Virus record (IMG/VR): IMGVR_UViG_3300032053_000002
Span: 62,001 to 126,000 of that record
Direction: 5' to 3' (one strand)
DNA length: 64,000 nucleotides
Position numbers and translations under genes: made by a program. Shown here piece after piece: positions 3,991 to 50,995 of this stretch. Below the pieces are notes generated by a model. That model saw nothing but the letters and a program-made list of their open reading frames with translations, did no database searches and was not told where the DNA came from. The stretch's first letter is position 1, and each line of letters starts with the position of its first letter.

Positions 3991-4141
3991 ATATCGAACA
4001 AGATACGGTGACGACTATGGCCTTTCGGCCAGGCGGACGCTCTACCCCTGAGCTACGGTCGCTAACTAATAGTCTGACCGGCGAAGACTTGAACTTCGCG
4101 ACATTCTGCATAGGATAATCATCAATCCATCGGCTCGATAT
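3991..4141 (-). ncRNA. yrlA: YrlA-type Y RNA (circularly permuted tRNA mimic with Ro-binding stem)
   Basis: ATATCGAGC-C-GA pairs with TT-GTTCGATAT (bulged C); order T-arm (GCGAAG TTCAAGT CTTCGC), loop-closed acceptor (CGGTC/GACCG), D-arm (GCTC AGGGGTA GAGC); about 1 kb upstream of rsr. Confidence 0.88.
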
Positions 4142-4430: not shown

Positions 4431-4850
4431 ATAAAAGAGTGGTGAGATTAGCATTTACTCACAAGCCTGAACCCGGACAGATTTTTAGTAGCACACCAGT
4501 TAACAGGCGTCCCGGTTAACTTTATATGGTGGAGAGAACCAGCGTCTCTCAACATTCACTAGTAGTAGCTATGTATGCCAACAAGTGGGGGATTTTAGCA
4601 AAAGCACCGCCTTTTTCGAATGAACCCCCGGAGTTGACCAACTCCCGAGAAAGGCGTCTACTTATCTGTGCGAATCGTGCAACCAACGAAAAACTTTTTC
4701 AAGTTTGTCGCCGTACTTTACCTACCTACATAGGTATTCAGTCACACTCATACTCATCAAATCCGAACAAATATGTAGAACCGATTCTACATAGCTAAAT
4801 AGCATAGTACGGTTTCGATGAGTTTCGTCGCCACGCAGGGCGACAAATAA
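4431..4850 (-). ncRNA. Unidentified large structured RNA(s)
   Basis: No credible minus-strand ORF; several perfect stems and crossing pairings. Confidence 0.55.
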
Positions 4851-8719: not shown

Positions 8720-9301
8720 TTAAACTTTTTCTCGCTCTCGTTTCATCATTTGTTCTATAACTGCATGCATCCAACATTGTGCGGTATATTCAATATATTC
8801 AAATACAAAAGGTTTCCCCTTTATCATAGAATACGCATTAGCTATTTTTTGCGGATGAAACTTTCCCACGTTCTTCATGACGCCATTCATATATACCGTA
8901 TAAATATCGCCACTTGTTTCAGGACCGGAATACAAAATGGCTTCCTGATTATATTTTTTTCCCAATTTTTTCGCCTTACTTAAATCAATGCCGATAACAA
9001 ACAATGATGGCTCGATTACTTGTTCTTTGGACTTTTCATCTTTCCAATACCCCGTTAGCCGAACGAACCCCAGCTGCATTGAACGAATAGTATTTTTTAA
9101 TTTACTAAACAATTCAATGTTTTCTTGTTCGGGCATTTTAACTCCTTCGGCATCATATTCTTTCCACGAGGTCAATATTGCGAATCCAATTTTGGTCGAA
9201 TCTTTATAATGTTGATACAGTCTATTTAAAGACGCCTCGTTTACTTTTTTGAAGTTCCCGTTTAGTTTATATTTTACAATATCAGAAAAAGATACACTCA
9301 C
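8720..9301 (-). CDS. Conserved phage protein, paralog 1 of 3 (DUF3293-like)
   Basis: EASLNRLYQH, FAILTSW, LGF..L.GY, E.SLFV, LGKKYNQEAILY shared with 31911-33072. Confidence 0.7.
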   Translation of the reverse strand: MSVSFSDIVKYKLNGNFKKVNEASLNRLYQHYKDSTKIGFAILTSWKEYDAEGVKMPEQENIELFSKLKNTIRSMQLGFVRLTGYWKDEKSKEQVIEPSLFVIGIDLSKAKKLGKKYNQEAILYSGPETSGDIYTVYMNGVMKNVGKFHPQKIANAYSMIKGKPFVFEYIEYTAQCWMHAVIEQMMKREREKV

Positions 9302-27659: not shown

Positions 27660-30299
27660 TTATTTCCACGTATAATACTCCTTTTCTTTTCTATCTATTA
27701 AAGATGTTCCGTCGGCCTGTATTGCCATCGGCTCACTCAATATAGCCATTCGTTTTTTATATTTCCAAAACATATCTAAATACCACAGATCGGCCGCGTG
27801 CCACTTTTCTTTTTGTAATATGTTTATCAGAAATTCTCTGTCCGATTTCTTAAACATAATACATTGCACGCAAATTATTTTATTTGTTTCATACATAAAG
27901 TCTATTCCATCAAAATCTTTTATTTTAGGCGACTCCAAATATCCGGTTTCCATATTTTGTTTGTCGCCGAACGAAAAATAAGTTATATCGTTTTTTTCCA
28001 TCGCTTCACCGACTCTATAAAGCATTTTCACAAAATCTTCTATCGGAACCGTTATCTTGCAGTCGGCTTCCGCTACAATAAAAAAATCTACGTCGTCTGC
28101 GAACTCTCCCAAAATACCGTATTTATGCGCGAGAAAACACCCATAATGTGCAGGAGATAACCGTGCGTCTCCAAAGGATTCGGTTACTCTTTCTGGATAT
28201 GCACAATTTTCCGTCGGGGGTTTTTTCGTATACGGTTCGTTATTATGTATGACATATTCTATACCGAAATCTTTTAACTTGCTTAGTTGCTCAATAGATT
28301 CTTTTTCTCGCGGAGTCTCTGGATTAGTAACCAGATGCACAACTTTTATTTTCTTTTTCGTCGCTCTCTTGGCGATAATTATTCCAAAATCGTCATTTTC
28401 AATGTCCGCTAATTCAACCGTAGATTGTTTGTATACCGCATATGTAAAATCGTTCTGGGTCAGTCTATTTAATATAACTTTCAATTTATTTTTATCAGGT
28501 GTATAATGATATTCCAGTAAAATGTTATCTATATTTTTTAGCATATCACTCGTTATAGTTTCAAATATATCATATTCCGACCCCTCAACGTCCATTTTCA
28601 GCACATCTATTTTTTCTATGCCATATTTTTCAAGCAAACTTTTTAAGGTCACTGTTTTCACCGTTTCTTTAACGAACCTTTTATCACTTAAATAACGGTC
28701 ATGGTCTTCTATTCCCAGTGAACTCCACCCCGACAATTCACCAACAAAAAAATCATGAGTCCCGTCCTCTTTATAAATTGCGGCATTCTCTACAATAATA
28801 TTGTTATATTTACTAAATGTTTTTTTCATATTATTCGCGTTTTTCTCAAATGGCTCAACCGCGATAACTTTACCCGCTCCTCGCGACAGAGAATATAATG
28901 TGAACGACCCGACATGCGCACCCAAATCAATCACCGTTCCATTTTCTTTAAAAGGCAAATCTTTATAAACGTTCCTATAAAAAAACTCAAAATAACTAAA
29001 GAATGAATCGTCCATCGGGTCTGATTCAATTTCCATATTAACCATCGGGGGTTCATTTCTCAATCTCACTTCGTGCGAATGAATCAACGCGCCATTCTTG
29101 TAAAACTCGAGCAAAAACCCGTTAAACCGAGGATAATTATAAAAAGTAATATCTTTAGCCGGAATCGGCACTATCCAATAGCGACAACCGTCTTTCAAAC
29201 TTAATTCGCAATTATACATAGGCAATTTCGTATCAATGTCCCTCGCGCCAACTCTCACATTGCAAGAATCCCCGCGATAAGTAAAGTTTATTCTATTGCT
29301 ATCATTTTCATATACGACATCTGTAATTTTCATCTTGCCTGATTGCGCAGATTTACCTAATAATTGTATTACTTTTTCCGCGTCACTCTCTTCACTTCCG
29401 ATTAAAAAATCAATAGTTTCAACAGAATCGTATCGATGATTATACGATTCCATATTAAACATCAGGACTTTTAATTTCCATCCGAGCGCTTCTTTAACAA
29501 CAAGCGGATTGCATTCCGCTTTTTCATTTGTCGCATACGATGGAAAAATGAGTAAATCACAGGACGAATAAAAATTATCAATATCATTTCTTTCGCCCCA
29601 AATGATACAATTGCGCGGTTTACCTCGCATCAATGGCTTCCAGTACGATTCAAAATTAACCGCTTGATTTCCGACAAAATGAAATTCGTATTGAGGCAAC
29701 AATCTTGCTAAGCCGAATACATACCCTTGATTTTTAAGCGAAGTAAATAATCCTACAACCAATATATGTTTTTTTTCTGCTCTTAATCCTATTTTCGCCA
29801 ACGCCTTTTTTCTATCGGGTCTTTCTTTATACTCTATCGGATAATCGAGCACTTCTTTTGGAATATCTATCCGTTCGTATTGCTCTAACTGATAATCACT
29901 AACAAATAAAAATTTATCCGGAAAAAACACTTTATTTTTCGGGTCAAAATCAACGGTGTGAGAAGTTTCAAAAATAACGTACGGTCTATCTTCCCGATAT
30001 ATTTTTCTGGCGACGCCTTCACTCATAAATATTTCTGGAATTTCTTCTATGTGAATTATATCCGGTGATATTTTATTTATAATATCAAATATTTCGGATT
30101 TATTTTCGCCAAGAGAATAAAACTTATTACCAAGCAACTTTTGTATTTTATCACGTTGAACCACATACGCTGCCGCTATAAATGCATACTCTATCACATA
30201 TAAATCATGGGTGGTATTTAATAACTCTATTTTTTTAAGAAGAAATTGTGGCTGACCGCCGGTAGACAAGTGTGGCGATATGTATAAAACTTTTTTCAT
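27660..30299 (-). CDS. GT4 glycosyltransferase + FkbM methyltransferase + glycosyltransferase multidomain protein
   Basis: HLSTGGQPQ, KNQ, E.NPLV.KEAL; IDLGAHVGSF..KMDVEGSE; YGCFLAH..VAEAD. Confidence 0.85.
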   Translation of the reverse strand: MKKVLYISPHLSTGGQPQFLLKKIELLNTTHDLYVIEYAFIAAAYVVQRDKIQKLLGNKFYSLGENKSEIFDIINKISPDIIHIEEIPEIFMSEGVARKIYREDRPYVIFETSHTVDFDPKNKVFFPDKFLFVSDYQLEQYERIDIPKEVLDYPIEYKERPDRKKALAKIGLRAEKKHILVVGLFTSLKNQGYVFGLARLLPQYEFHFVGNQAVNFESYWKPLMRGKPRNCIIWGERNDIDNFYSSCDLLIFPSYATNEKAECNPLVVKEALGWKLKVLMFNMESYNHRYDSVETIDFLIGSEESDAEKVIQLLGKSAQSGKMKITDVVYENDSNRINFTYRGDSCNVRVGARDIDTKLPMYNCELSLKDGCRYWIVPIPAKDITFYNYPRFNGFLLEFYKNGALIHSHEVRLRNEPPMVNMEIESDPMDDSFFSYFEFFYRNVYKDLPFKENGTVIDLGAHVGSFTLYSLSRGAGKVIAVEPFEKNANNMKKTFSKYNNIIVENAAIYKEDGTHDFFVGELSGWSSLGIEDHDRYLSDKRFVKETVKTVTLKSLLEKYGIEKIDVLKMDVEGSEYDIFETITSDMLKNIDNILLEYHYTPDKNKLKVILNRLTQNDFTYAVYKQSTVELADIENDDFGIIIAKRATKKKIKVVHLVTNPETPREKESIEQLSKLKDFGIEYVIHNNEPYTKKPPTENCAYPERVTESFGDARLSPAHYGCFLAHKYGILGEFADDVDFFIVAEADCKITVPIEDFVKMLYRVGEAMEKNDITYFSFGDKQNMETGYLESPKIKDFDGIDFMYETNKIICVQCIMFKKSDREFLINILQKEKWHAADLWYLDMFWKYKKRMAILSEPMAIQADGTSLIDRKEKEYYTWK

Positions 30300-31910: not shown

Positions 31911-32498
31911 TTACAAAATTTTTATCCACTCTGAAACAAGATCCCGTTCTTTTTGGTAAATATAACTTGTTGGAAAATCCAGTATTAGTCTTTCAGCAAC
32001 AAACGCGAATTTTGCGTCCTTCTTGGAACGTTTTATCAGTGAAGAGAACGCGGCTTTAACTGTCGTTGGATTAAAAGTTAAAGTGCTCTTATCACGTTTG
32101 AAATTCATAAGACGTTTTCCCACACCAACATCGTTTCTCGCGCCAACCAGAGAAAATTCACTCGCATCTTTCCAGATAACAGATTGTTGGCTATATTTCT
32201 GCGCCAGTTTTATGGCGTCACGTTCTTTAATTTCAGGAATGAAATAACTTTTCTCTTCAGCAAATTTTTCTCCGTCATCCGTCTTATATGAATATCCGCT
32301 ATTCATTTCTATAAAACCATATCCGAGTTTTCGTATATCTTTCGCCAACGTCTTATGATTCTTCTCATCGTTTTCATCGTCTAAATATGCCGATATGATA
32401 GCAAAAGACGTGTTTGGATTGTTGATGTGCTGCCAAACTCTTGATAACGAATTCTCTATAAATAAATTTTTCAGTAATAAACTTTTACTTTTATTCAT
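31911..32498 (-). CDS. Conserved phage protein, paralog 2 of 3 (DUF3293-like)
   Basis: ENSLSRVWQH, FAIISAY, LGYGFIE. Confidence 0.7.
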   Translation of the reverse strand: MNKSKSLLLKNLFIENSLSRVWQHINNPNTSFAIISAYLDDENDEKNHKTLAKDIRKLGYGFIEMNSGYSYKTDDGEKFAEEKSYFIPEIKERDAIKLAQKYSQQSVIWKDASEFSLVGARNDVGVGKRLMNFKRDKSTLTFNPTTVKAAFSSLIKRSKKDAKFAFVAERLILDFPTSYIYQKERDLVSEWIKIL

Positions 32499-33072
32499 TT
32501 ATTTCCTCATAAACGGTATACCACTTCAACGGTTCGTCCCGGTGATATGCCATTCTATTAAAAGATGGCGACTCTCTTTCTTGCAATCTAAATAGAAATT
32601 TTCTACCACGATGCGACCCCTTTAATAAAGAAGAAAAAAAGTCCTTTAATATTTTAACATTAAAATCGTAATTGGATTTTCCAGATGATTTAATAAATCT
32701 TTTTAAAATCTCGCCTATTCCGGAATTCATATTAGTTCCTATTTCAATAAATTCATCTTTATCTTTATACAAAACCGAATATTGATCATACTTCTTTCCT
32801 AACTCCACCGCTTGATTTCTACTGATACCGGGAATAAATAAAGAAGATTCTTCTGTAAATCCCGATTCTTCCTGATAACCACCTTTCAGTTCTATAAATC
32901 CTAATCCCATTTTTCTAACCGCTTTTTTTAATTCCAAATATCTTTCTGCATTTTCTTTATCTGAAAATTCTATTCGGGACGCCGAGATAACTCCGAAAGA
33001 CGAGTCGGCATCTTCTATGTGCTGAAATATCCTTGATAATGAACTTTCTTTAATTAAACTTTTCATCTTCAT
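32491..33072 (-). CDS. Conserved phage protein, paralog 3 of 3 (DUF3293-like)
   Basis: ESSLSRIFQH, FGVISAS, LGFIELKGGY, LGKKYDQYSVLY. Confidence 0.7.
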   Translation of the reverse strand: MKMKSLIKESSLSRIFQHIEDADSSFGVISASRIEFSDKENAERYLELKKAVRKMGLGFIELKGGYQEESGFTEESSLFIPGISRNQAVELGKKYDQYSVLYKDKDEFIEIGTNMNSGIGEILKRFIKSSGKSNYDFNVKILKDFFSSLLKGSHRGRKFLFRLQERESPSFNRMAYHRDEPLKWYTVYEEINE

Positions 33073-33110: not shown

Positions 33111-33482
33111 TTAAATTTTGTCAATATCAAATTCCTTTATATGTTCCCATTTCGGATGCGCAAACTTTCCATTTTCAATCTCAAAGTAAACTCGGTCGTA
33201 ATCTTCCACGAGTGGATAATGCACCGTCCCTCTTTCAGGATAATGTTCTATCCAGATAAAGTTTTCCGGAATAATTTCCACTTGATAACGCAACTTATTG
33301 AAAATTTCTGTTGCCAGATATTCGGCGAAATTCGTAATAGACGTTCCTGGATTATAGGGAAGTTCAGTTGCGATAACAATCACTCGATTAGTTTTTTCAT
33401 CTAACATGGCTTCAATGTGACACTTACTTTCACATAGTCCGAATCCGCGATACGAATATACATCATCATATAATTTTTTCAT
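33111..33482 (-). CDS. Hypothetical protein
   Basis: TELPYNPGTSITNFAEYLA..WIEHYP. Confidence 0.65.
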   Translation of the reverse strand: MKKLYDDVYSYRGFGLCESKCHIEAMLDEKTNRVIVIATELPYNPGTSITNFAEYLATEIFNKLRYQVEIIPENFIWIEHYPERGTVHYPLVEDYDRVYFEIENGKFAHPKWEHIKEFDIDKI

Positions 33483-33691
33483 ATATCCTCCAATACAAAA
33501 TTATTTATTCCAATCCTTATCTTCAATCACTTTTATAATAAGGCTTATAGCAAAACCAAATAATAAAAATGTGAAGAGTGGTATTAATACAAATAATAGT
33601 ATTTGGTATATATAACATAAACCAGCTAATACAAATAAAAACAAAGTTATACCATATCCAATAATATAAGCACGTTTCATTTTATCTCCTC

Positions 33692-34111
33692 CTATTTAAA
33701 AATTTCTTTATGAATACAAACTACATTATTTTCGTTTGTTTTTTCATCATATTGACTAACATATACGCTATATGATTGATATTCTATTCTTATACTCATA
33801 ACCGCGTCGCGAATCATATGACTCTTAATTATTTTAGTAAACCAATCCACCAATTCCTGTTCATTATCATAATCTCTTAGGTCGCCCCAGAAATTTACAG
33901 TATACGCTGCAAGATGATGATCTTCCGGATTTTCCCATATATTTACTTGAATAGACCCTTCGCTACCACATGGAACATTGCATTCTTTCCACTCTATTTC
34001 GTCATCAGTAAAACCACAAGTCTTAAATTTTGAATTCAAATCCGTATAATCACTCATTACTTTCAAATGATCAATTCTTATTGAACCATTAACATGCGTC
34101 CATTGACTCAT
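33692..34111 (-). CDS. Hypothetical phage protein
   Basis: MSQWTHVNGSIRID, PCGSEGS. Confidence 0.7.
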   Translation of the reverse strand: MSQWTHVNGSIRIDHLKVMSDYTDLNSKFKTCGFTDDEIEWKECNVPCGSEGSIQVNIWENPEDHHLAAYTVNFWGDLRDYDNEQELVDWFTKIIKSHMIRDAVMSIRIEYQSYSVYVSQYDEKTNENNVVCIHKEIFK

Positions 34112-35115
34112 ATTATTACCACCTTATTAAATTCGTTGTATAAAGACCGTTTACCCTTTTCAAACAATTTGTATTTTTTGCGAACAACTCCATCAGGAAC
34201 ATTGGAACGGTCTATACCTTTTTCAATGTCGTCTTTGATACGTCTAATAGCAACTTCAGGGTCTACTTCAAACACAACCGCTATTTTTCTGCAATCATTA
34301 AAATCAGACATAAATTCTATTCTTAACCACTTATCAACACTGGTCGCGTCTAAATAGGTTTTTCCGTATTTTAGCAAATCAACTTTCATTCGCACTTTAG
34401 TCTCTTCCCAAACGTCATCGTTTGCGGCTTGATTGGAAATATTGCCAGTAAACTCACGGCGAATTTCATCCGGGCAAACAATATATTTTTTATCTATGTT
34501 TTTCAAATAACGAGATTTTCCAGATCCTGGAATACCAACCATAACATAAACTTTTTTACTGGAATGTCGTTGTTTAAAATGAACAAACATTTCTTTAATT
34601 TTATTTTTCTTCAAATCGAAATTGGTAGCAAAAGTCGCCCACGCCGCTCTAGATTGTCCTTTATCCATCTGAACAAATCGTCTTAAATCTTCATCTTGAA
34701 TTTTATCATAATCAGAAACATTTTTTATAGAGTGATTCATATGTTCTGCAATTACTTTTACGGTAACATCATAATACTTAATATAATCTTTGTATTCTTC
34801 AATAAATTCTACAGACTTTTTCGCGTGACCGTACGAATAAATCTTTTTTTCGCCAACGGTGGTTTTCCACGCTTTTCCGACATCATGTAAAAAAGCCGCT
34901 TCGATTAGGTTATCGTACCCAAACATTTTAGTTACGTAAACCATATTAAAGGTATGCAACAGTGCATCAAACTCAGGATGATAATAGGTGGATTGCGGAA
35001 TACCATCCAACGCATTCACAACTTTGGAAGTTATGAAGTATTGGCGCATTTCGTATTTCCACGCATCAAAATCAGAGTAATTTGCGTTGTATAGTATGTC
35101 GTAAAAAGTTTTCAT
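34108..35115 (-). CDS. HD-Pnk RNA end-healing enzyme (HD phosphoesterase + polynucleotide kinase)
   Basis: HT..V, AAFLHDVGK (HD); GIPGSGKS P-loop, CPDEIR, LDATS. Confidence 0.85.
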   Translation of the reverse strand: MKTFYDILYNANYSDFDAWKYEMRQYFITSKVVNALDGIPQSTYYHPEFDALLHTFNMVYVTKMFGYDNLIEAAFLHDVGKAWKTTVGEKKIYSYGHAKKSVEFIEEYKDYIKYYDVTVKVIAEHMNHSIKNVSDYDKIQDEDLRRFVQMDKGQSRAAWATFATNFDLKKNKIKEMFVHFKQRHSSKKVYVMVGIPGSGKSRYLKNIDKKYIVCPDEIRREFTGNISNQAANDDVWEETKVRMKVDLLKYGKTYLDATSVDKWLRIEFMSDFNDCRKIAVVFEVDPEVAIRRIKDDIEKGIDRSNVPDGVVRKKYKLFEKGKRSLYNEFNKVVII

Positions 35116-35405
35116 ATTTAAATCGATTTTAAAACTTTAAGCCTGTTTTTTAATCCGCCAACCGTAGTCGCAACCAAATACGTCTTGATATAACTGCGAT
35201 ATCTGGGAGTATTCCACTTAGACATTGAAGTTTTTTTAATCATTAAATCGACAACTTTTGTCGCCAAATACAATTTCTCATTTTTCATCTTTCCAATTTC
35301 CTTTTAAATTATACTATAATATAATCAATAATAACACATCAGTCAACTAAAATCTATTATTTCTTTTAAAATAATGAAGATTGTAACCTACTATTTTTTA
35401 TCAAG

Positions 35406-36005
35406 TTAAACTATTCGTTCTAATAATTTCTTTTCTTCCAATACTCTATGCAATATCTGAATAATAAACAACTCGAATTTTTTACCCGCGTTAGAATATA
35501 AATACATTATAGCTTCAATAGGCGTTTTTGCTTTTCGATAAGGTCTTTCAACAATCATTGCATCATATACGTCCGCAACCGCCAATACTTGAGATAACCC
35601 GTTGAATTTATCTCCACTTAACCCATCCGGATAGCCAGACCCATCCAGTCTTTCATGATGCTGAAGCGCGATTTCGGCTTCATCTAAATAATTTAATGAT
35701 TTTAATATTGTATGACTATATTTCGGGTGTTTTCTCATTTCTTCAAACTCGACATCTGTTAGTTTTTCGCTCTTAAAAATAATGTGATTCGGAACTTTAA
35801 TTTTGCCAACGTCATGATAATATGCGGCGCGAACTAATTTATGAGTTATATCTTTTTCGAATTTTAATTTCCCCGCCATATCATTTACCAGACGCCCAAC
35901 TCGCAACGAATGCTGCATAGTGTATTCTGAATCCTCTACTGCCTTCAAGAGACTCATGGCGGTTAAAAGACTTTCGTAATCCCGAATATATTTTACATCT
36001 ATCAT
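35406..36005 (-). CDS. HD-GYP domain protein
   Basis: HSLRV, HDVGK, HHERLDGSGYP, VADVYDAM...RPYRKA. Confidence 0.95.
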   Translation of the reverse strand: MIDVKYIRDYESLLTAMSLLKAVEDSEYTMQHSLRVGRLVNDMAGKLKFEKDITHKLVRAAYYHDVGKIKVPNHIIFKSEKLTDVEFEEMRKHPKYSHTILKSLNYLDEAEIALQHHERLDGSGYPDGLSGDKFNGLSQVLAVADVYDAMIVERPYRKAKTPIEAIMYLYSNAGKKFELFIIQILHRVLEEKKLLERIV

Positions 36006-36017
36006 CCATTTTCTCGC

Positions 36018-37193
36018 CTATTTTTTCATCAATAAAAACTTAACCTTTTTAGAACCCATCTCACCAAGAACCGACTTCGGGTCTAATTCAAAGTTATCTA
36101 CCATTCTAAAAATTATTCCGGTTAAAGATTTATTAACATTTTCTAAAACCGCGAATGCTAACTCTTTACGAGACATGGTTTTGGACATTCCTCGGTAAAT
36201 CTCTCCTTCTTTCAATAAATAGTCAACCAAATTAGAATATTTTTCCTTTAATGATTTATATTCTTCGCGGACTTTGTCAGGAAGTTTATTTAAGTATACC
36301 TCAAATTCTTTCATTTCATTATTCATTAAAACATTTATTAAATTATTAGTTATTCCTTCGCCAGTTGCGACATGATGTAACTGAATGTATTTCGGAGATT
36401 TAATTTTAACTCTTCCGATAACTTCATCTTCTTCAAACTGAGATACAACAAATCCTTCAAAGTCGTTCCCGTTCAGATTTTCTTTATCTGCAATATTAGA
36501 CAATTCCATTATATCATTTACGTCTTTTAAATCGAAAAGTTTAGGAAATCTAATAGGCAAGCCATTAAAAACACTTTCCATCTTTTTTCGAATAGATTTA
36601 TAGAATATGTTGAAATCTTTAGAAGTTTCATTTTCTTTTAATCCAATAAATACCAATTCTTTTTTAGAATAATCAACAACTATTCGAGCCGACGAGTGAA
36701 CCAACTCAAACATATAAGTTTTGTCTTGCTCAAATTGAGAAGTTAAGATATTAAAATCTTCTCTGGAAATAATATCAAAAAATAACTCTTCAAATGGAAT
36801 TTTATCAGTAGTAGTCGCGTCTTTAGCATCAATAGTTCCATTGGTTGCAATTCGCCATTTTTCATCATAAAAATAAACTTTAATAATTGAACCATCCACT
36901 TTTTCTATAATATAGGATTTTTCTAAATCTATGTTAAATGCATGAGATTCTCCGTAATTCCAGAATTTGAAAAATGGATTACATACTATTTTCCAGGTAC
37001 CATTTTCTAAAATTATTCCGCGAGATTCGCGAACGATTGAATTGGAAAAATCAGAATTAAATTGATTATATTTAAATAAAACAAGATTGTTTTTTGCAGA
37101 AATAATAAGATTAAAGGGGTCTTTTTTTAAGTCCTCTATGGCTCTATTTTCCAAGAATTTTTGTAGAGATAACATTGTAATATTTTCTTTCAT
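36018..37193 (-). CDS. T4 Rnl1-type RNA ligase
   Basis: RESRG, KFWNYGE, EKVDGS (motif I), FELV, EGFVV, KIKSPKY. Confidence 0.93.
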   Translation of the reverse strand: MKENITMLSLQKFLENRAIEDLKKDPFNLIISAKNNLVLFKYNQFNSDFSNSIVRESRGIILENGTWKIVCNPFFKFWNYGESHAFNIDLEKSYIIEKVDGSIIKVYFYDEKWRIATNGTIDAKDATTTDKIPFEELFFDIISREDFNILTSQFEQDKTYMFELVHSSARIVVDYSKKELVFIGLKENETSKDFNIFYKSIRKKMESVFNGLPIRFPKLFDLKDVNDIMELSNIADKENLNGNDFEGFVVSQFEEDEVIGRVKIKSPKYIQLHHVATGEGITNNLINVLMNNEMKEFEVYLNKLPDKVREEYKSLKEKYSNLVDYLLKEGEIYRGMSKTMSRKELAFAVLENVNKSLTGIIFRMVDNFELDPKSVLGEMGSKKVKFLLMKK

Positions 37194-37345
37194 AAAGTAA
37201 ATATACTCATATTATACATCACAGTCAACCGATTTCTTTGTATTCCGTATGCTATTCAAGAATTTTATGTTTTCTATACTTAACTCGTTGTATAACAACG
37301 GGTTAAACCTTATTCTTTCAAGTTCGTTCAATTCTGTTTTTCTGA

Positions 37346-37903
37346 CTAAAATTTTTCACTTTTATATTTATTCAATAAAGTTAAGTCCGAAACCATCTTT
37401 CGTTTCCAACCCGGATTACGCAACGCTGCGGCCGGATGGTAAGTGCCCATAAAATCGTACCTTCCTCGATTAAAAATTTTTCCATGATGAATGTCGTGAA
37501 TATATCCTTTCATCATTATTCCAGAAGATATTCGCCCGATCCCAACTATTATACTGGGATTGGCGAAAGTTGTTATTTGGTCTATTAGATAACGCCCACA
37601 AATATTTAACTCGTCGGGTTCGGGATCTCTATTATTCGGTGGGCGGCATTTCACTATATTGGTAATATAAACATCTCTTTTCAAAGATAGTCCTATTTCA
37701 CGTAAAATGGTTCTAAGTAGTTGCCCTGACCTACCGATGAACGGCAATCCTATGCTATCCTCGTCCGCTCCAGGTGCTTCTCCGATAAGCATAATGGGAG
37801 CTGTTACGCTCCCATCCGCTACGACAACCTGTGTTCGGGTTTGACATAGTTTGCATTTTTGGCAACCGAGTAACTCGGTTACCCAGTTTTCGTAAGATTG
37901 CAT
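37346..37903 (-). CDS. udg: Uracil-DNA glycosylase family 4
   Basis: CQKCKLC, GEAPGADE, FIGRSG, NIVKCRPP, YHPAA. Confidence 0.93.
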   Translation of the reverse strand: MQSYENWVTELLGCQKCKLCQTRTQVVVADGSVTAPIMLIGEAPGADEDSIGLPFIGRSGQLLRTILREIGLSLKRDVYITNIVKCRPPNNRDPEPDELNICGRYLIDQITTFANPSIIVGIGRISSGIMMKGYIHDIHHGKIFNRGRYDFMGTYHPAAALRNPGWKRKMVSDLTLLNKYKSEKF

Positions 37904-37922
37904 ATTAAAAATTACATTCTAT

Positions 37923-38501
37923 CTAGAATTGATAAGTCAAACTAAGCATTACTGGGATAACGGTTTGTTCATTGCCCCCACTTATACCTATCTCTTCCTC
38001 GTAGGATTCTAATATACTCTTTGACCGATCCGTATATATGGGATAACCGACCCATCCGTTAAATGCTATCTTTTGAGATAGAAAATATCTTATTCCAACG
38101 TGAATTTCATAATAAGTAATACTTCCTGTCCAACTCTCATCGCTATACGCAGATGTTGTTCCAACTCGTTCACTTAATATCCCGGCCCCAATTCCCAATA
38201 GCCATTTAGTTCGTGAAATAGATACATAGTCACCGAGAAAAATATTCCAACCGAACCATCCACCACCGCTTGTCGGTTTGTTTATCAAGTCTTCGTTATT
38301 TTCCCAATCAAATGCATGATATTCAAGAAAGAATTCGCCACTGCCTTGTGTTATTGTTAAAACGGGGCCGAGAACACTACACCCAACATTATAACTAGTT
38401 TCTTCTTTGCCAAATTCGTCTTGAGCATAAATCATAGAAAACAACATAAAAACAAAAAACATAACAATTAATTTTTTCATAACACACTCCTTTTTTATCA
38501 A
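37923..38501 (-). CDS. Outer-membrane beta-barrel protein
   Basis: Signal peptide, alternating beta strands, C-terminal LTYQF. Confidence 0.75.
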   Translation of the reverse strand: MIKKECVMKKLIVMFFVFMLFSMIYAQDEFGKEETSYNVGCSVLGPVLTITQGSGEFFLEYHAFDWENNEDLINKPTSGGGWFGWNIFLGDYVSISRTKWLLGIGAGILSERVGTTSAYSDESWTGSITYYEIHVGIRYFLSQKIAFNGWVGYPIYTDRSKSILESYEEEIGISGGNEQTVIPVMLSLTYQF

Positions 38502-42264: not shown

Positions 42265-42624
42265 CTACCTAGATACTTGCTCCAAAACAAATTCAATATC
42301 TTCCGCCGTAAATGGTTTATGTAGAAAAAATACATTTATGTCGTTGGAAAGTTCGGCTAGCGGATATCCGCTCATCAAAACAATTTTAATATCCGAAGAC
42401 AGTGCTCTAATTTTTTCATATGCTTCTATACCGGATGTTTCCGGCATAATCATATCTAAAAACACAACACTTAAATTTTCAATATTGTCTTTTACTTTTT
42501 GAACGCCTGCATCACCGCCGTCCGCAGTAATAATTTCAAAATCCAATTCAAATGAATTTAATGTATCTCTGAAATAATCTATTAAATTTTCATCGTCGTC
42601 AACAATCAATATTAATTTTCCCAT
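42265..42624 (-). CDS. Stand-alone response-regulator receiver
   Basis: ILIVDDD, VFLDMIMP, LMSGY, LHKPF. Confidence 0.95.
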   Translation of the reverse strand: MGKLILIVDDDENLIDYFRDTLNSFELDFEIITADGGDAGVQKVKDNIENLSVVFLDMIMPETSGIEAYEKIRALSSDIKIVLMSGYPLAELSNDINVFFLHKPFTAEDIEFVLEQVSR

Positions 42625-42696: not shown

Positions 42697-43194
42697 TTAT
42701 TTGCAAAATCTATTTGCGGCATACGTGGCCGCGAAAGCATTAGGTTTGATCTGAACGTTGAATCCGCGGCCTCTCAGATATCCGATTGCAGAATCCTTGA
42801 TCATGTTGGATGCAAATTTTTCGTTTTCATTTGCATCAACATGCGCTTCAAATTCTGTAACATTAAATCCGTTGTCGCGAAGATACTCAGATACTTCCGC
42901 AAGTTTTTCTACTTCTTTCCAAAGTCTAGTGAAAATTCCGCCGCGGCTCTCATCATATTTTCTTTCTTTTTCTCTAGTATGAATAACATGAACTCCGCGA
43001 CCGATTCCATCAGTTACTCTGCGAATGCCAACGGCAACAGAATAAATAGTATGGATTCTATTTACCTGAGAATCGCAACCGACATAAATTTCGTATTGCG
43101 CAGTATTGTCCTTTTCCATATACTCACGAATATATTTCGCCAAATCAGAAATTTTCTTTCCGCTCTGAGTATAAAAAAGTCTGGTCTTGTTCAT
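42697..43194 (-). CDS. RNase H-like YkuK-family protein
   Basis: YVGCDSQ, RLWKEVE, HVDAN, IKPNAFAATYAAN. Confidence 0.85.
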   Translation of the reverse strand: MNKTRLFYTQSGKKISDLAKYIREYMEKDNTAQYEIYVGCDSQVNRIHTIYSVAVGIRRVTDGIGRGVHVIHTREKERKYDESRGGIFTRLWKEVEKLAEVSEYLRDNGFNVTEFEAHVDANENEKFASNMIKDSAIGYLRGRGFNVQIKPNAFAATYAANRFCK

Positions 43195-43475: not shown

Positions 43476-43946
43476 CTATTTGATAAACTTGTTTTTGTTT
43501 TGTTCTTCGATTCGAAATCCTTCACGTATCTCCATCAGCATTTTTCCTAGCATATTATATCCGAGACCTTTCTTATTTCTCCCCCAGTAAAAATCTTTTT
43601 CGCTTAATTCTATTATTTCCGCGGTTCCCGTTGATAATAATAAATTTCTAAAACATGGAATACGAAATTTTGTTTTTAACGCCTCGAGCATTATGAAATC
43701 TTTTTTTTCGTTCCAGTTTTTTCTTATATACGGCCGTAATTCTTCTTTCCACGCAGCTTCCTTAGCGAGTATAGCCGTCAGCTTCATCCGTATGTATTCT
43801 TCCCACTCCGTTCCAGCAAACTTTTGTGATTGATAGAAATTTTCTACGGATGAATAATTCTTACCATTTATCTCTAATGAAACGGGATAAAAGTTACTGA
43901 ATTCGCCGTACGGATCTTTTAATTTGCTAAAGTATATCGTTTCCAT
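43476..43946 (-). CDS. NADAR-family protein
   Basis: FSNFY, SVENFYQSQKF, KF...LLLSTG...E.S..D.YWG, NMLGKMLM. Confidence 0.93.
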   Translation of the reverse strand: METIYFSKLKDPYGEFSNFYPVSLEINGKNYSSVENFYQSQKFAGTEWEEYIRMKLTAILAKEAAWKEELRPYIRKNWNEKKDFIMLEALKTKFRIPCFRNLLLSTGTAEIIELSEKDFYWGRNKKGLGYNMLGKMLMEIREGFRIEEQNKNKFIK

Positions 43947-44659
43947 TTTTTAAGTATAATTTGCTCTCTTATATTAACTTGATTCCACGGAATATCATTT
44001 CCGATATTTTCATCAATTTCATATGTGATGCGAGCCAGTGGCGGTAAACAAACAAATAGCGTTCCATTGATATATTCCGCAATAGATTCGTGCCAGTGCC
44101 CAAATATCCAAATTTTTGGTTTATGTATTCCAAACATCGCATCCATCGCCATTGTTGTACGAGTACTGTGCACGTTCAGCAATCTAAAAAGTTGCGCAGA
44201 AACATTTTTCGGGCATTCGTGGCAAATCACTATTTCAGGTTTAACTTTTTCATATAAATTAATCGCTTTCGCCAATTCTTCATGCGACAATTCTTCCTGT
44301 GGCCACCAATCTATTCCAATCGTTCTAAAATCTCTGTCTATTGAATATGCGCCTCTGACCGTAAAAAATTTAAACCACGCATTTTCATGAGTTATGGGTT
44401 CTTTAAAATCAGAACCGACATACCAGTTAATATAACCATAATCTTTGAGCGCGTATTCTCTCCGTATCCCGTGATAATCTTCATGGTTTCCCAGAACAAT
44501 TTTATGTCTATGCGGATCTATATTAAAGTCCACCAATTTTTTCCACTCGGTCGCAAATCCGAAATCACCCACTTGAATAGAATATTGCGCGTCTTTTATT
44601 ATATTCAGATATTGTTCAAAACAACCGTGAACATCTCCGATAATGGTAATTTTTGTCAA
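43919..44659 (-). CDS. Metallophosphoesterase
   Basis: GDVHG, VGD, GNHE, CHECP, FGHWH. Confidence 0.9.
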   Translation of the reverse strand: MTKITIIGDVHGCFEQYLNIIKDAQYSIQVGDFGFATEWKKLVDFNIDPHRHKIVLGNHEDYHGIRREYALKDYGYINWYVGSDFKEPITHENAWFKFFTVRGAYSIDRDFRTIGIDWWPQEELSHEELAKAINLYEKVKPEIVICHECPKNVSAQLFRLLNVHSTRTTMAMDAMFGIHKPKIWIFGHWHESIAEYINGTLFVCLPPLARITYEIDENIGNDIPWNQVNIREQIILKKWKRYTLAN

Positions 44660-46200: not shown

Positions 46201-46458
46201 ATTAAAAGATTGCTTCTATAACCAGGATTCTGTATGGTATTTCTACCACGGTAATCATTTCTCTACCGGCGTTCTACCCGACCGTAAGTCCCGCTTACAA
46301 ACCGGTCTGCTCGAACTTGCACGAAATCGTTCATTCGTTTCGCGTGGTACCGCGATATACTATAAAACTATCTCCCACACCAAGCGGCCCGTGTCCTGAG
46401 TTTCCTCTCGCGCCACTTATCGTGGTCTGCGAGCGATTACCCGAAACAATCTTTTAAT
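46201..46458 (-). ncRNA. rnpB: RNase P RNA (compact)
   Basis: P1 AAAAGATTGTTTC/GAAGCAATCTTTT; P2 GGTAATCG/TGATTACC; P3; GAGGAAACTCAGGA pairs with ACAGAATCCTGGTTAT (P4 with bulged U); P15 with GGGTA loop; P19 TGGTA-GAAA-TACCA. Confidence 0.92.
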
Positions 46459-49492: not shown

Positions 49493-50995
49493 CTATTTCG
49501 AATCCAAAACATCTCGTACCCGTTTAAGTATAGTCAGTGGAGTAACCGGTTTTTCAATAAAATTAATATTTTCGTGTAGTATTCCATAATGTACTATTGT
49601 ATTATCAGTATATCCTGACATATATAATGTTTTAATTTTTGGGTATTTTTTGATTAGATTTTCTACTAATTCTACTCCATTCATTTTTGGCATAACGACA
49701 TCAGTTAATACAATGTCGATTGGAACATTAAGTGTTTCCACTTTTTCTAATGCGATCACACCATTTGAAGCCATAATTACGGTATATCCAGAATTTTCTA
49801 AACGGTCTTTTATAAGATTTCTAACTTCTAGTTCATCTTCTACTAATAATACTGTTTCGGTTCCTCTTATATCGTTTTCATTTATTTTATCAACCAAAAA
49901 GCGTTTTACGGCAATATCATCAGTTGAAGGAAAATAAATATAAAATGTTGCTCCGTGCCCAGGTTCACTTTCTGCCCAAATATGTCCATTACTTTGTTTA
50001 ACAATGCCGTATACCACAGGCAAGCCAAGACCGGTTCCTCTTCCCAATGGTTTAGTCGTAAAAAATGGTTCAAATAATCGATCCTTTACTTCTTTAGTCA
50101 TTCCTACGCCAGTATCTGAAATAGAAATCAAAACAAATGAACCTCTTTTATCAAATGGTTCGATGGATTCAACGTTTTCAGTTTTTATTACCAATTTTCC
50201 CCCATCTGGCATAGCATCAATCGCGTTTATACAAATATTTATTAAAACTGATTGAAATTGAACCGTATCTATTTTAATATTTTTAATATCTGGGGATAGA
50301 TTTAAAGAAAAATCAATGTCTTCTTTTATAAACTGACTTAAAAAATCTTTTTGTTCGGATAAAAATTGATTTGGGTCAACAGTTTCCATTTTCATCATTT
50401 GTTTTTTACTAAATGCTAAAAGTCGTTTTACAAATTTTTCTGCCCGTTCACTCGCACGAAAAATTTTTCCAACTTTAACTTGTTCATTTGAATCTGGAAC
50501 TAATTTATTCATTAGCTCTTCGCTATATCCTTTTATAACGGTTAAAATATTATTAAAATCATGTGCGATACCGCCCGCTAATAAACCAACGGCTTCTAAT
50601 TTAGAAGTATTTTTTAATTGGTCTTCTAAAACAGTTTTTTCATTTTCAAGGCACGTTATATCTCTAACATAAACAATCCCAAGCGTTTCATTGTCATGAT
50701 TAAAAAATTTTGCATATACTTCGCATGAAAATGAACTACCATCTTTTTTTCTATTAATAGTTCTAGTAAAGAATTTTCCTGTTTTTTTACCGATTTCCAT
50801 TAATTTAGGCAGAGTCATTTTATAATATTCTTCCGAAGTTAAATCATGTACATTTAATATAGATTTAAATTCTTCGCGTGTATATCCGTATAATTCAATG
50901 GCAGTTTGATTACAATCTAAAATAGTACCATCTAATTTTTCTAAAAAAATTGCGTCCGGTGACGTATCAAGTATTAAATCAAAAAATCTTTTCAT
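49493..50995 (-). CDS. Hybrid sensor histidine kinase (PAS-HisKA-HATPase-REC)
   Basis: GIAHDFNN H-box, NAIDAM, DTGVG, FEPFFTTK, GTGLGL; receiver LVEDE..TDVVMP..EKP. Confidence 0.96.
   Translation of the reverse strand: MKRFFDLILDTSPDAIFLEKLDGTILDCNQTAIELYGYTREEFKSILNVHDLTSEEYYKMTLPKLMEIGKKTGKFFTRTINRKKDGSSFSCEVYAKFFNHDNETLGIVYVRDITCLENEKTVLEDQLKNTSKLEAVGLLAGGIAHDFNNILTVIKGYSEELMNKLVPDSNEQVKVGKIFRASERAEKFVKRLLAFSKKQMMKMETVDPNQFLSEQKDFLSQFIKEDIDFSLNLSPDIKNIKIDTVQFQSVLINICINAIDAMPDGGKLVIKTENVESIEPFDKRGSFVLISISDTGVGMTKEVKDRLFEPFFTTKPLGRGTGLGLPVVYGIVKQSNGHIWAESEPGHGATFYIYFPSTDDIAVKRFLVDKINENDIRGTETVLLVEDELEVRNLIKDRLENSGYTVIMASNGVIALEKVETLNVPIDIVLTDVVMPKMNGVELVENLIKKYPKIKTLYMSGYTDNTIVHYGILHENINFIEKPVTPLTILKRVRDVLDSK

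What the first reader, a model, noticed from the sequence alone, without database searches (positions are those of the whole stretch)
34108..37193. tRNA repair pair (HD-Pnk + Rnl1) completing a supply-mature-repair-survey module
Seen: an HD-phosphoesterase/P-loop kinase fusion and an Rnl1-type ligase one gene apart. Known: T4 Pnkp/Rnl1 repair PrrC-cut tRNA, and bacterial HD-Pnk heals RNA ends. Inference: with 48 tRNA-like genes, RNase P, PTH2-like, nucleotidyltransferase, YkuK-like and Ro/Y genes, the window encodes an unusually complete counter-measure to tRNA-targeting immunity.
Basis: partly seen in the sequence, partly recalled or inferred. Interest (0 to 1): 0.62.

Follow-up and report, generated by a model that had tools for sequence, protein, structure and literature searches.

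The report
Phage RNA heal-and-seal repair cassette
A 293-kb uncultured sediment phage carries a tightly linked gene cluster (an RNA ligase of the T4 Rnl1 type, an HD-GYP phosphodiesterase, and an HD-phosphoesterase/polynucleotide-kinase fusion) that most likely mends RNA, probably tRNA, cut by host defence nucleases; this is a recognisable variation on a well-known phage strategy, not a new kind of system.

Summary
Window 34108-35115(-) encodes a 335-aa N-terminal HD / C-terminal P-loop polynucleotide kinase fusion, with all HD and kinase motif residues invariant across its family. Window 36018-37193(-) encodes a 391-aa Rnl1-type ligase with motifs I, III, IV and V intact and a full-length fold match to T4 Rnl1.

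They are separated by an HD-GYP gene (35406-36005) and a doubtful 56-aa ORF. Linkage is conserved and non-random. Rnl1 lies within 8 kb in 7 of 7 HD>kinase loci and in 13 of 19 HD-containing kinase loci, against 1 of 53 kinase-only loci (p = 5e-9). One virus fuses kinase, HD and Rnl1 in a single 680-aa protein.

The HD-kinase is homologous in both halves, and in the same order, to bacterial HD-Pnk, which pairs with a different ligase family (PF09414).

The wider "supply-mature-repair-survey module" is only partly supported.
- Confirmed: Ro60, a YkuK-type RNase H-like gene, a nucleotidyltransferase, 44-45 tRNAs, and a sub-threshold but conserved mini RNase P-like RNA.
- Weak: PTH2 and Y RNA.
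- Not found in the genome: CCA-adding enzyme, RtcB, Rnl2 and tRNA-Arg.

These parts are scattered over about 47 kb. The concept is already published for jumbo phages (PMC7824862). Verdict: a new member of a known kind, of moderate interest.

The parts
36018..37193 (-). Rnl1-type ATP-dependent RNA ligase, 391 aa (P0002); first gene of the cassette
   Evidence: PF09511 at 73.2 bits; phrog_562 at 6e-49. Invariant in the family alignment: R58-G59, F77/N79, K98-x-D100-G101 (motif I), F162-E163 (III), E246-G247 (IV), K263-x-K265 (V). AF2 model pLDDT 88. Best PDB fold is T4 Rnl1 over the full length, E 4e-17, TM 0.62-0.67. It is the only Rnl1 in the genome.
35406..36005 (-). Stand-alone HD-GYP phosphodiesterase, 199 aa (P0003), lying between ligase and HD-Pnk
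   Evidence: HD_5 at 2.6e-34. It carries the HD motif and a complete HHExxDGxGYP motif. Nearest solved structures are the PmGH c-di-GMP phosphodiesterase (4mcw, 2.5e-28) and the V. cholerae 3'3'-cGAMP phosphodiesterase (5z7c, 1.9e-27). It occupies the same slot in L001/L002/L014 and L005. Thirteen relatives share their longest-contig length with HD-Pnk relatives.
35118..35288 (-). 56-aa ORF (P0004), doubtful gene
   Evidence: No Pfam or PHROG hit. No counterpart in relatives, where HD-GYP and HD-Pnk are only about 40 nt apart.
34108..35115 (-). HD-Pnk: N-terminal HD 2',3'-phosphoesterase-type domain plus C-terminal 5'-OH polynucleotide kinase, 335 aa (P0001)
   Evidence: HD and AAA_33. Invariant across 18 family members: H46-P47-E48, H54, H77-D78, H97, H125, D151; G194, GSGK 197-200, D216, R219, D256, R265, R292, R303. 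AF2 pLDDT 95.2. Kinase half: Z 19.1 to CthPnkp kinase, 16.1 to Pnkp1, 15.2 to T4 Pnk. HD half: Z about 9 to HD hydrolases. Both halves match bacterial HD-Pnk frames in the same order. Single copy in the genome.
42697..43194 (-). YkuK/DUF458 RNase H-like protein, 165 aa; recurrent upstream neighbour of the cassette
   Evidence: PF04308 at 1.8e-26. Homologs lie 0.5-3 kb upstream of Rnl1 in L001/L002, L005 and L006. The family is biochemically uncharacterised (PMC3985635).
42265..42624 (-). Receiver-like (Rec) single-domain protein, 119 aa, next to YkuK
   Evidence: A Response_reg hit was found among the window ORFs. Homolog of the Rec ORFs beside YkuK in L002 and L005 (E 6.5e-42 and 4.6e-38). 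It may correspond to the 'cRec' domain that PMC7824862 links to RNA ligases; this was not tested.
43476..43946 (-). NADAR-domain protein, 156 aa, in the conserved upstream block
   Evidence: A NADAR hit at 3e-26 was found among the window ORFs. Homolog of the L002 NADAR ORF (4e-30); phrog_1017.

Best explanation
The three co-directional, tightly spaced genes Rnl1 / HD-GYP / HD-Pnk form a phage 'heal-and-seal' RNA repair cassette.

Host defence ribonucleases that cut without metal leave a 2',3'-cyclic phosphate and a 5'-OH. These include anticodon nucleases and many toxin or CRISPR-accessory RNases. The proposed steps are:
1. The HD domain of HD-Pnk opens and removes the cyclic or 3' phosphate to give a 3'-OH.
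2. Its P-loop kinase domain puts a phosphate on the 5'-OH.
3. The Rnl1-type ligase adenylylates itself at K98, transfers AMP to the 5'-phosphate, and seals the break.

The most likely physiological substrate is tRNA broken in the anticodon loop, as in T4 Pnkp/Rnl1 against PrrC. The HD-GYP enzyme in the middle most likely hydrolyses cyclic di- or oligonucleotide signals.

Shown here: domain identities, intact catalytic residues, folds, conserved linkage, a natural fusion, and homology to bacterial HD-Pnk. Inferred: all enzymatic activities, tRNA as the substrate, and the role in counter-defence.
For: Domains and motifs.

Folds: the kinase half is closest to bona fide polynucleotide kinases of RNA repair systems (Z 19.1, 16.1, 15.2, against 13.4 or less for other P-loop kinases; Foldseek). 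The ligase is closest to T4 Rnl1 over its whole length, including the C-terminal helical domain.

Homology to biochemically characterised types: the A2 profile hits both halves of 370-400-aa frames, in the same order, in about 20 of 151 Cytophagales genomes. Direct BLASTP gives 24% identity, E 6e-8. Those bacterial genes sit directly downstream of a ligase, as published for Runella HD-Pnk (PMC6097658).

Linkage: 7 of 7 HD>kinase loci and 6 of 12 kinase>HD loci have Rnl1 within 8 kb, against 1 of 53 kinase-only loci. Fisher p = 5e-9. The genes abut in L006. L088 encodes a 680-aa kinase-HD-Rnl1 fusion.

Genome context: 45 tRNAs, 44 of them in this window. No other RNA ligase or PNK in the genome.

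Literature: phage RM378 PNK has an HD-domain 3'-phosphatase (PMC1997131). The jumbo-phage RNA repair scheme is in PMC7824862.
Against: No biochemical or expression data exist; no RNA run holds this DNA.

The host and its nucleases are unknown.

Runella HD-Pnk also heals DNA ends (title of Munir and Shuman 2017, as cited in PMC6097658), so specificity for RNA, let alone tRNA, is not established.

The HD half matches solved HD hydrolases only at Z about 9, which is in the grey zone for helical domains.

The promoter and terminator scan was no better than shuffled sequence, so the operon structure rests on spacing alone.

The complex prediction for ligase plus HD-Pnk gave no verdict.
Confidence: 0.62

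Rival explanations
1. This is a general-purpose nucleic-acid end repair system, not a tRNA-specific one. The cassette would mend any RNA with 2',3'-cyclic-P/5'-OH ends, such as phage mRNA or rRNA cut by toxin RNases, Cas13 or Csm6/Csx1. Alternatively, HD-Pnk would heal DNA 3'-phosphate/5'-OH ends.
For: Bacterial HD-Pnk is described as a DNA/RNA end-healing enzyme whose natural substrate is unknown (PMC6097658). A uracil-DNA glycosylase gene lies immediately upstream in the window and two genes upstream of the ligase in L003. An HD-GYP that probably removes signals activating non-specific RNases sits in the same cluster.
Against: The ligase is Rnl1-type, with the C-terminal helical domain matched to T4 Rnl1. 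From general knowledge of T4 Rnl1, that domain confers tRNA preference. The cassette lies inside the tRNA-rich part of the genome.
Confidence: 0.25
2. This is a maturation function for the phage's own RNAs. The pair would process or join phage tRNA or other ncRNA precursors (splicing of intron-bearing or split tRNAs, RNA circularisation) rather than repair damage.
For: It lies close to 44 phage tRNA genes and an RNase P-like RNA. Several tRNAs are unusually long, at 79-87 nt. Heal-and-seal enzymes carry out tRNA splicing in fungi (PMC6379707 abstract).
Against: ARAGORN in intron mode predicts no intron in any tRNA of the window. No splicing endonuclease turned up in the ORF scans. In distant relatives the cassette is conserved without shared neighbours such as the window's tRNA arrays.
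Confidence: 0.07
3. The two genes are functionally unrelated neighbours. Rnl1 would act mainly as a tail-fibre attachment factor (the T4 gp63 moonlighting role), and the HD-kinase would act on small-molecule nucleotides.
For: PHROG labels the ligase family 'RNA ligase and tail fiber protein attachment catalyst'. AAA_33 kinases and HD domains include small-molecule enzymes.
Against: Linkage is conserved across 28-54% identity, and a natural kinase-HD-Rnl1 fusion exists. All ligase catalytic residues are invariant. The kinase fold ranks polynucleotide kinases clearly first.
Confidence: 0.04

Closest known systems
Phage T4 Pnkp + Rnl1 tRNA repair pathway (counter to the PrrC anticodon nuclease)
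   Same: The logic is the same: a bifunctional end-healing enzyme (5' kinase plus 3' phosphoesterase) working with an Rnl1-family ligase. The kinase fold matches T4 Pnk (Z 15.2). The ligase fold matches T4 Rnl1 full length, and the ligase motifs are conserved.
   Different: The 3'-end-healing domain is an HD metal-dependent phosphohydrolase placed N-terminally, not T4's C-terminal DxDxT (HAD) phosphatase. The genes are tightly linked and have an HD-GYP gene inserted between them. Sequence identity to T4 Rnl1 is only about 20%.
Bacterial HD-Pnk (Runella slithyformis type; also the D. radiodurans PNKP with an N-terminal HD)
   Same: The domain order is the same (N-terminal HD, C-terminal P-loop kinase), both halves are detectably homologous, and the gene lies directly downstream of an ATP-dependent ligase gene (PMC6097658; PMC1997131).
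   Different: The partner ligase in bacteria is a small PF09414-type enzyme (231 aa in G001). The phage's partner is a PF09511 Rnl1. Identity is only 24%. The phage clade has no close cellular relatives among 185,579 species genomes scanned by pattern. No Tpt1 or MTase-HIT partners were seen in the ORFs scanned.
Rhodothermus phage RM378 polynucleotide kinase (kinase + HD 3'-phosphatase) and RM378 Rnl1
   Same: A phage that has both an HD-type PNKP and an Rnl1-family ligase. HD-domain 3'-phosphatase activity has been measured (PMC1997131). The RM378 ligase is a hit of P0002 (H32). From memory of the 2005 study (not re-checked here), the RM378 enzyme has the kinase>HD domain order. Proteins of that order are common in IMG/VR and keep the HD motifs.
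   Different: The domain order is reversed (kinase first). In RM378 the two genes flanking the ligase downstream are not the PNK, so the genes are not adjacent there.
Clostridium thermocellum Pnkp / Pnkp1-Rnl-Hen1 bacterial RNA repair systems
   Same: These give the closest solved kinase structures (Z 19.1 and 16.1). They have the same healing-plus-sealing organisation.
   Different: Those systems use a calcineurin-type metallophosphoesterase and add a Hen1 methyltransferase. No Hen1 was found among the window ORFs scanned here.
Jumbo-phage RNA-repair and tRNA-provisioning repertoire described by Iyer et al. 2021 (PMC7824862)
   Same: It is the same set of component classes: many tRNAs, Rnl1, PNK, a phosphoesterase, a Pol-beta-type nucleotidyltransferase, a TROVE protein, NADAR, a Rec-like domain and HD-GYP.
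   Different: [quoted passage not shown] The conserved Rnl1/HD-GYP/HD-Pnk gene order and the RNase P-like RNA are not mentioned in the passages read ('RNase P' has 0 occurrences).

Membership tests
Rnl1 (T4 RNA ligase 1 family, PF09511) | Score above the curated Pfam threshold | tested here: met
   73.2 bits against a cut-off of 28.3. Confirmed on the genome at 74.5 bits.
Rnl1 (T4 RNA ligase 1 family, PF09511) | Covalent nucleotidyltransferase motifs I (KxDG), III, IV and V, with the adenylylated lysine | tested here: met
   K98-x-D100-G101, F162-E163, E246-G247 and K263-x-K265 are invariant in 9 family members. The N-terminal part aligns to T4 Rnl1.
Rnl1 (T4 RNA ligase 1 family, PF09511) | Full-length fold, including the all-helical C-terminal domain | tested here: met
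   Foldseek best hits are 2c5u, 5tt6 and 9do4 (T4 Rnl1), 378-407 aligned columns, TM 0.60-0.67, E down to 4e-17. These rank ahead of Rnl3 and Trl1 ligases. The model has helices through 267-389.
Rnl1 (T4 RNA ligase 1 family, PF09511) | ATP-dependent sealing of 5'-P/3'-OH breaks in the tRNA anticodon loop | not testable with these tools
   Needs biochemistry.
HD-Pnk (bacterial bifunctional end-healing enzyme) | N-terminal HD domain with the H...HD...H...H...D metal-ligand set | tested here: met
   H54, H77-D78, H97, H125 and D151, plus H46-P47-E48, are invariant in 18 sequences. Pfam HD at E 3.5e-6. HD-hydrolase folds at Z about 9 over residues 1-170.
HD-Pnk (bacterial bifunctional end-healing enzyme) | C-terminal P-loop 5'-OH polynucleotide kinase domain (GxxGxGKS, an Asp at the general-base position, substrate-binding Arg residues) | tested here: met
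   G194, GSGK 197-200, D216, R219, D256, R265, R292 and R303 are invariant. The segment holding D216/R219 aligns with the corresponding segment of the CthPnkp kinase. Z 19.1, 16.1 and 15.2 to CthPnkp, Pnkp1 and T4 Pnk.
HD-Pnk (bacterial bifunctional end-healing enzyme) | Detectable homology of both halves, in the same order, to bacterial HD-Pnk proteins | tested here: met
   The profile hits HD (E 8.5e-11) and kinase (E 2.4e-10) in one 373-aa frame of G001, and similar frames in about 20 of 151 Cytophagales genomes. BLASTP E 6e-8, 24% identity. No Runella sequence was available for direct comparison.
HD-Pnk (bacterial bifunctional end-healing enzyme) | Operon with an ATP-dependent polynucleotide ligase | tested here: met
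   A ligase lies upstream in all seven HD>kinase loci. It belongs to a different ligase family (PF09511) from the bacterial partner (PF09414).
HD-Pnk (bacterial bifunctional end-healing enzyme) | Kinase and 2',3'-phosphoesterase activities on polynucleotide ends | not testable with these tools
   Needs purified protein.
T4-type Pnkp (kinase + DxDxT/HAD phosphatase) | C-terminal acyl-phosphatase (HAD) domain following an N-terminal kinase | tested here: not met
   No HAD domain is present. The phosphoesterase is an HD domain and is N-terminal. It works like T4 Pnkp but is not a member.
HD-GYP cyclic-dinucleotide phosphodiesterases (for P0003) | HD_5 domain with the HD dyad and the HHExxDGxGYP motif | tested here: met
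   HD_5 at 2.6e-34. Both motifs are visible in the translation. PmGH at 2.5e-28 and V-cGAP3 at 1.9e-27. Substrate not testable.
   Ro60 is clear (vWA_Ro60 at 4.4e-59, TROVE at 4.1e-36; phrog_850). The YrlA model gives only 22.3 bits (gathering score 69), E 0.16, at 4005-4125(-).
   66.1 bits, below the gathering score of 100, but E 7e-18 with the whole model spanned in 250 nt. Similar hits occur in two related phages. The P4 strands are invariant and P1 shows compensatory changes. Most of the specificity domain is missing.
   No match in the whole genome at E <= 0.001 or among window ORFs at E <= 0.01. Only window 13935-14369 is homologous (E 6e-18) to a relative's ORF that carries a precomputed PTH2 label.

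The most novel reading that the evidence does not exclude
The conserved order Rnl1 / HD-GYP / HD-Pnk is a functionally integrated 'quench-and-repair' operon. The HD-GYP enzyme would destroy the cyclic di- or oligonucleotide second messengers (CBASS, type III CRISPR) that switch on collateral RNases. HD-Pnk and Rnl1 would repair the 2',3'-cyclic-P/5'-OH breaks those RNases have already made. Alternatively, this HD-GYP has been recruited as the RNA 2',3'-cyclic phosphodiesterase step of the repair pathway. Either way, a cyclic-nucleotide phosphodiesterase would be a dedicated third component of a phage RNA repair system.
Probability: 0.15. Interest if true: 0.65.

Novelty: new member of a known kind. 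Interest (0 to 1): 0.36.

Why it matters
The finding shows that bacterial-type HD-Pnk has a phage-borne sister clade, so far seen only in metagenomes, that is coupled to an Rnl1-type ligase. A natural kinase-HD-Rnl1 fusion gives independent genomic evidence that these enzymes work together. This extends the list of end-healing modules that phages plug into the T4-style tRNA/RNA repair pathway.

It also gives compact, well-modelled candidates (pLDDT 95 and 88) for biochemical work and for RNA-ligation tools.

The embedded HD-GYP gene suggests a testable link between removing defence signals and repairing RNA damage.

The conceptual framework is already published, however, so the advance is incremental.

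Tried and rejected
- Megablast of the 5.5-kb region against 50,697 phage records: no match.
- tBLASTn of P0001 against the same records: HD-only or kinase-only partial hits, no full-length relative.
- Promoter and terminator consensus scan of 33400-38000: counts equal to shuffles, uninformative.
- RM378: the two genes downstream of its ligase are not kinase or HD proteins. The full text of Munir and Shuman 2017 is not held.
- Complex prediction for ligase plus HD-Pnk: score 0.01, no verdict. This is not evidence either way.
- Genome-wide searches for PTH2, CCA-adding enzyme (PolyA_pol), Rnl2-type ligase and RtcB: none found.
- TAG recoding to explain the suppressor tRNA(CUA): no support. ORF coverage is already 0.67-0.99 under code 11, and reading TAG as sense gains no more than the TGA control.
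- tRNA introns as a reason for a ligase: none predicted in the window.
- Sequencing-run search: only DNA contigs from sediment metagenomes and no RNA runs.
- The large representative protein search was not run, because the word search and family scans had settled the protein identities.

Full report
**Setting.** The window is bases 62001-126000 of a 292,723-bp IMG/VR virus record that CheckV rates 91% complete. It is AT-rich (31-46% GC), and almost all genes are on the minus strand. ARAGORN finds 44 tRNA genes in the window and 45 in the whole genome. Near-identical DNA occurs in several sediment metagenome runs, and no RNA run is on record. There is no nucleotide-level match to 50,697 deposited phage genomes. 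This is an uncultured jumbo phage.

**The observation.** The interval's two ends are exactly two minus-strand ORFs.

P0001 (34108-35115, 335 aa) has an N-terminal HD domain and a C-terminal AAA_33 P-loop kinase domain. It hits PHROG 'polynucleotide kinase' and the kinase domain of C. thermocellum Pnkp in PDB.

P0002 (36018-37193, 391 aa) is RNA_lig_T4_1 well above threshold. It hits phrog_562 at 6e-49 over nearly its whole length and T4 Rnl1 in PDB.

Between them lie P0003 (35406-36005, 199 aa), a stand-alone HD-GYP protein, and a 56-aa ORF without hits or conservation. Gaps between the genes are 12, 117 and 2 nt, and the next ORF downstream overlaps by 4 nt, so the cluster looks operon-like. 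The consensus promoter/terminator scan was no better than shuffles and adds nothing.

**Are the enzymes intact?** An alignment of P0001 with 17 relatives (30-57% identity) keeps two residue sets invariant.
- HD metal ligands: H54, H77-D78, H97, H125 and D151, together with an H46-P47-E48 motif. The HD part also resembles the HD domains of phage CCA-adding enzymes.
- Polynucleotide-kinase set: G194, GSGK 197-200, D216, R219, D256, R265, R292 and R303.

The AlphaFold model is excellent (pLDDT 95.2). Its C-terminal half aligns best with true polynucleotide kinases of RNA repair systems: CthPnkp Z 19.1, Pnkp1 of the Pnkp1/Rnl/Hen1 complex Z 16.1, T4 Pnk Z 15.2. Other P-loop kinases score 13.4 or less (Foldseek agrees). 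Residues 1-170 align with HD hydrolases at Z about 9. That is modest for a helical domain but consistent with the motifs.

For the ligase, nine family members keep R58-G59, F77/N79, motif I K98-x-D100-G101, motif III F162-E163, motif IV E246-G247 and motif V K263-x-K265. The model (pLDDT 88) matches T4 Rnl1 over its full length, C-terminal helical domain included. That match ranks ahead of Rnl3 and fungal Trl1 ligases.

**Is the pairing meaningful?** The word search found about 45 full-length relatives of P0001, all from metagenomes, several on contigs of 130-309 kb.

In four diverged relatives the order is Rnl1, then HD-GYP or a small ORF or nothing, then HD-kinase. In the most distant of these (38% identity) the two genes abut.

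A scan of IMG/VR gave 80 more loci. I classified all non-redundant kinase-bearing ORFs with profiles built from the family.

| Kinase-bearing ORF class | Loci with Rnl1 within 8 kb |
|---|---|
| HD>kinase | 7 of 7 (six of them within 1 kb) |
| Kinase>HD, about 300-336 aa | 6 of 12 |
| Kinase with an unclassified extension | 3 of 9 |
| Short kinase-only | 1 of 53 |

Comparing all HD-containing loci (13 of 19) with kinase-only loci gives p = 5e-9. One virus (L088) encodes a single 680-aa protein with kinase, HD and Rnl1 domains in series. That is a Rosetta-stone fusion. The kinase>HD proteins retain the HD signature. Both genes are single-copy in this genome, which has no Rnl2-type ligase and no RtcB.

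**Relation to known enzymes.** The family profile hits both halves, in the same order, of 370-400-aa frames in about 20 of 151 sampled Cytophagales genomes. Bacterial HD-Pnk was characterised in Runella slithyformis, which by general taxonomic knowledge belongs to that order.

One such protein is 24% identical to P0001 (E 6e-8). It sits directly downstream of a 231-aa PF09414 ligase, matching the published Runella operon (PMC6097658). The phage clade instead uses a PF09511 Rnl1.

The literature also records PNKPs made of a kinase and an HD phosphohydrolase. Phage RM378's enzyme has measured HD-domain 3'-phosphatase activity, and D. radiodurans PNKP has an N-terminal HD (PMC1997131). RM378 also has an Rnl1, but the two genes next to it are not the kinase.

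The window's enzyme is therefore a divergent member of the HD-Pnk type and works like T4 Pnkp. It is not a T4-type Pnkp, because it has no HAD phosphatase domain.

**Mechanism proposed.** Healing of 2',3'-cyclic-P or 3'-P ends by the HD domain, phosphorylation of 5'-OH ends by the kinase, and sealing by Rnl1 through a K98-AMP intermediate.

tRNA is the favoured substrate for two reasons. The ligase is Rnl1-type with the C-terminal domain, and the cassette lies in the tRNA-rich region. This step is inferred, not shown. Repair of other RNAs, or DNA end healing, remains a serious alternative.

**The middle gene.** P0003 has the HD dyad and a complete HHExxDGxGYP motif. Its nearest solved relatives are a c-di-GMP phosphodiesterase (4mcw, 2.5e-28) and a 3'3'-cGAMP-specific phosphodiesterase (5z7c, 1.9e-27).

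About 40 stand-alone relatives at 48-59% identity exist. Thirteen of them share their longest-contig length with HD-kinase relatives, which suggests, indirectly, that they lie on the same contigs. The gene occupies the same slot in two other lineages.

Jumbo-phage HD-GYP enzymes have been predicted to degrade defence signals (PMC7824862). Its stable place inside the repair cassette is the most interesting unexplained feature, and it underlies the 'quench-and-repair' reading (probability about 0.15).

| Component | Result |
|---|---|
| Ro60 | Confirmed: TROVE + vWA, 1331-3019 |
| YkuK/DUF458 RNase H-like | Confirmed: 42697-43194 |
| Pol-beta-type nucleotidyltransferase | Confirmed: 11659-12381 (phrog_388) |
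| NADAR/YkuK/Rec-like block | Recurs upstream of the cassette in relatives |
| RNase P | Partly confirmed: RF00010 match at 46203-46452(-), below gathering score (66 against 100 bits) but E 7e-18, spanning the whole model in 250 nt with the P4 strands kept and most of the specificity domain missing. Similar RNAs occur in two related phages, and the P1 stem shows compensatory changes |
| Y RNA | Weak: YrlA 22.3 bits, E 0.16, at 4005-4125 |
| PTH2 | Weak: no Pfam match, only a transitive homolog at 13935-14369 |
| CCA-adding enzyme, RtcB, Rnl2 | Not found |
| tRNA-Arg | Not found |

These elements are scattered over about 47 kb among unrelated genes. The general scheme has been described for jumbo phages, with HD-type phosphatases noted as rare (PMC7824862). 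Ro/YrlA pairs are also known in phages (PMC4201824).

**Verdict.** This is a new, metagenome-only member of the known phage heal-and-seal RNA repair kind. Its distinguishing features are the bacterial-type HD-Pnk domain order, tight linkage to Rnl1, and an embedded HD-GYP gene. Interest is moderate (0.36). Nothing in this work required a referred step.

Noticed in passing
window 46203-46452 (-); also L109 (about 1500-1755) and L110 (about 1500-1703): A miniaturised RNase P class A-like RNA of 250 nt. It scores 66.1 bits (gathering score 100), E 7e-18. P1-P4 are matched and both P4 strands are conserved, but about 110 model positions of the specificity domain are replaced by 31 nt. Similar RNAs occur in two related phages (75.6 and 50.7 bits), and the P1 stem shows compensatory changes. 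I found no paper describing a phage-encoded RNase P RNA in two literature searches. This may deserve its own follow-up.
   Followed up: partly
window 35406-36005 (-): A stand-alone HD-GYP phosphodiesterase embedded between the RNA ligase and HD-Pnk. It has a full HHExxDGxGYP motif. Its closest solved structures are c-di-GMP and 3'3'-cGAMP phosphodiesterases. It holds this slot in several relatives.
   Followed up: partly
window 12629-12702 (-) and whole genome: A suppressor tRNA with anticodon CUA, which ARAGORN labels 'Pyl'. A six-frame coverage test shows no sign that TAG is read as sense anywhere in the genome.
   Followed up: yes
whole genome (45 tRNAs); window 19704-19779 (-): ARAGORN finds no tRNA-Arg although the other 19 amino acids are covered. 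One tRNA has a predicted four-base anticodon (caga). Rfam finds one further tRNA at 17919-17995 whose identity was not determined.
   Followed up: no
window 8720-9301, 31911-32498, 32491-33072 (all -): Three paralogous DUF3293 / S-adenosylmethionine-lyase-like genes, two of them in tandem. They are possible anti-restriction SAM lyases.
   Followed up: no
window 4432-4769 (-) and 4005-4125 (-): A sub-threshold manA RNA-like match (34.3 bits, gathering score 55.2, E 3.8e-5) next to tRNA-Met. A non-significant YrlA (Y RNA-like) match lies about 1 kb upstream of the Ro60 gene (1331-3019).
   Followed up: partly
window 49493-50995, 6758-7936, 42265-42624 (all -): Phage-encoded signalling proteins: a hybrid PAS-histidine kinase-receiver protein (500 aa), a multi-PAS protein (392 aa), and a single-domain receiver-like protein next to YkuK. 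The last may be the 'cRec' domain of PMC7824862.
   Followed up: no
window 24227-30299 (-): A block of a radical-SAM/SPASM protein, a 569-aa methyltransferase-glycosyltransferase and an 879-aa glycosyltransferase-FkbM methyltransferase. They suggest glycan or DNA/surface modification.
   Followed up: no
L088 7992-10034 (+) (IMG/VR 3300021400_000128): A single 680-aa ORF that fuses a polynucleotide kinase, an HD-like domain and an Rnl1 ligase. This is a natural one-protein heal-and-seal enzyme in another virus.
   Followed up: partly
window 43919-44659 and 10207-10722 (-); 13935-14369 (-): Two calcineurin-like metallophosphoesterases, which could be further end-healing or nucleotide-degrading enzymes. 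The third ORF is homologous to a PTH2-annotated protein of a related phage but is not itself recognised by the PTH2 model.
   Followed up: partly
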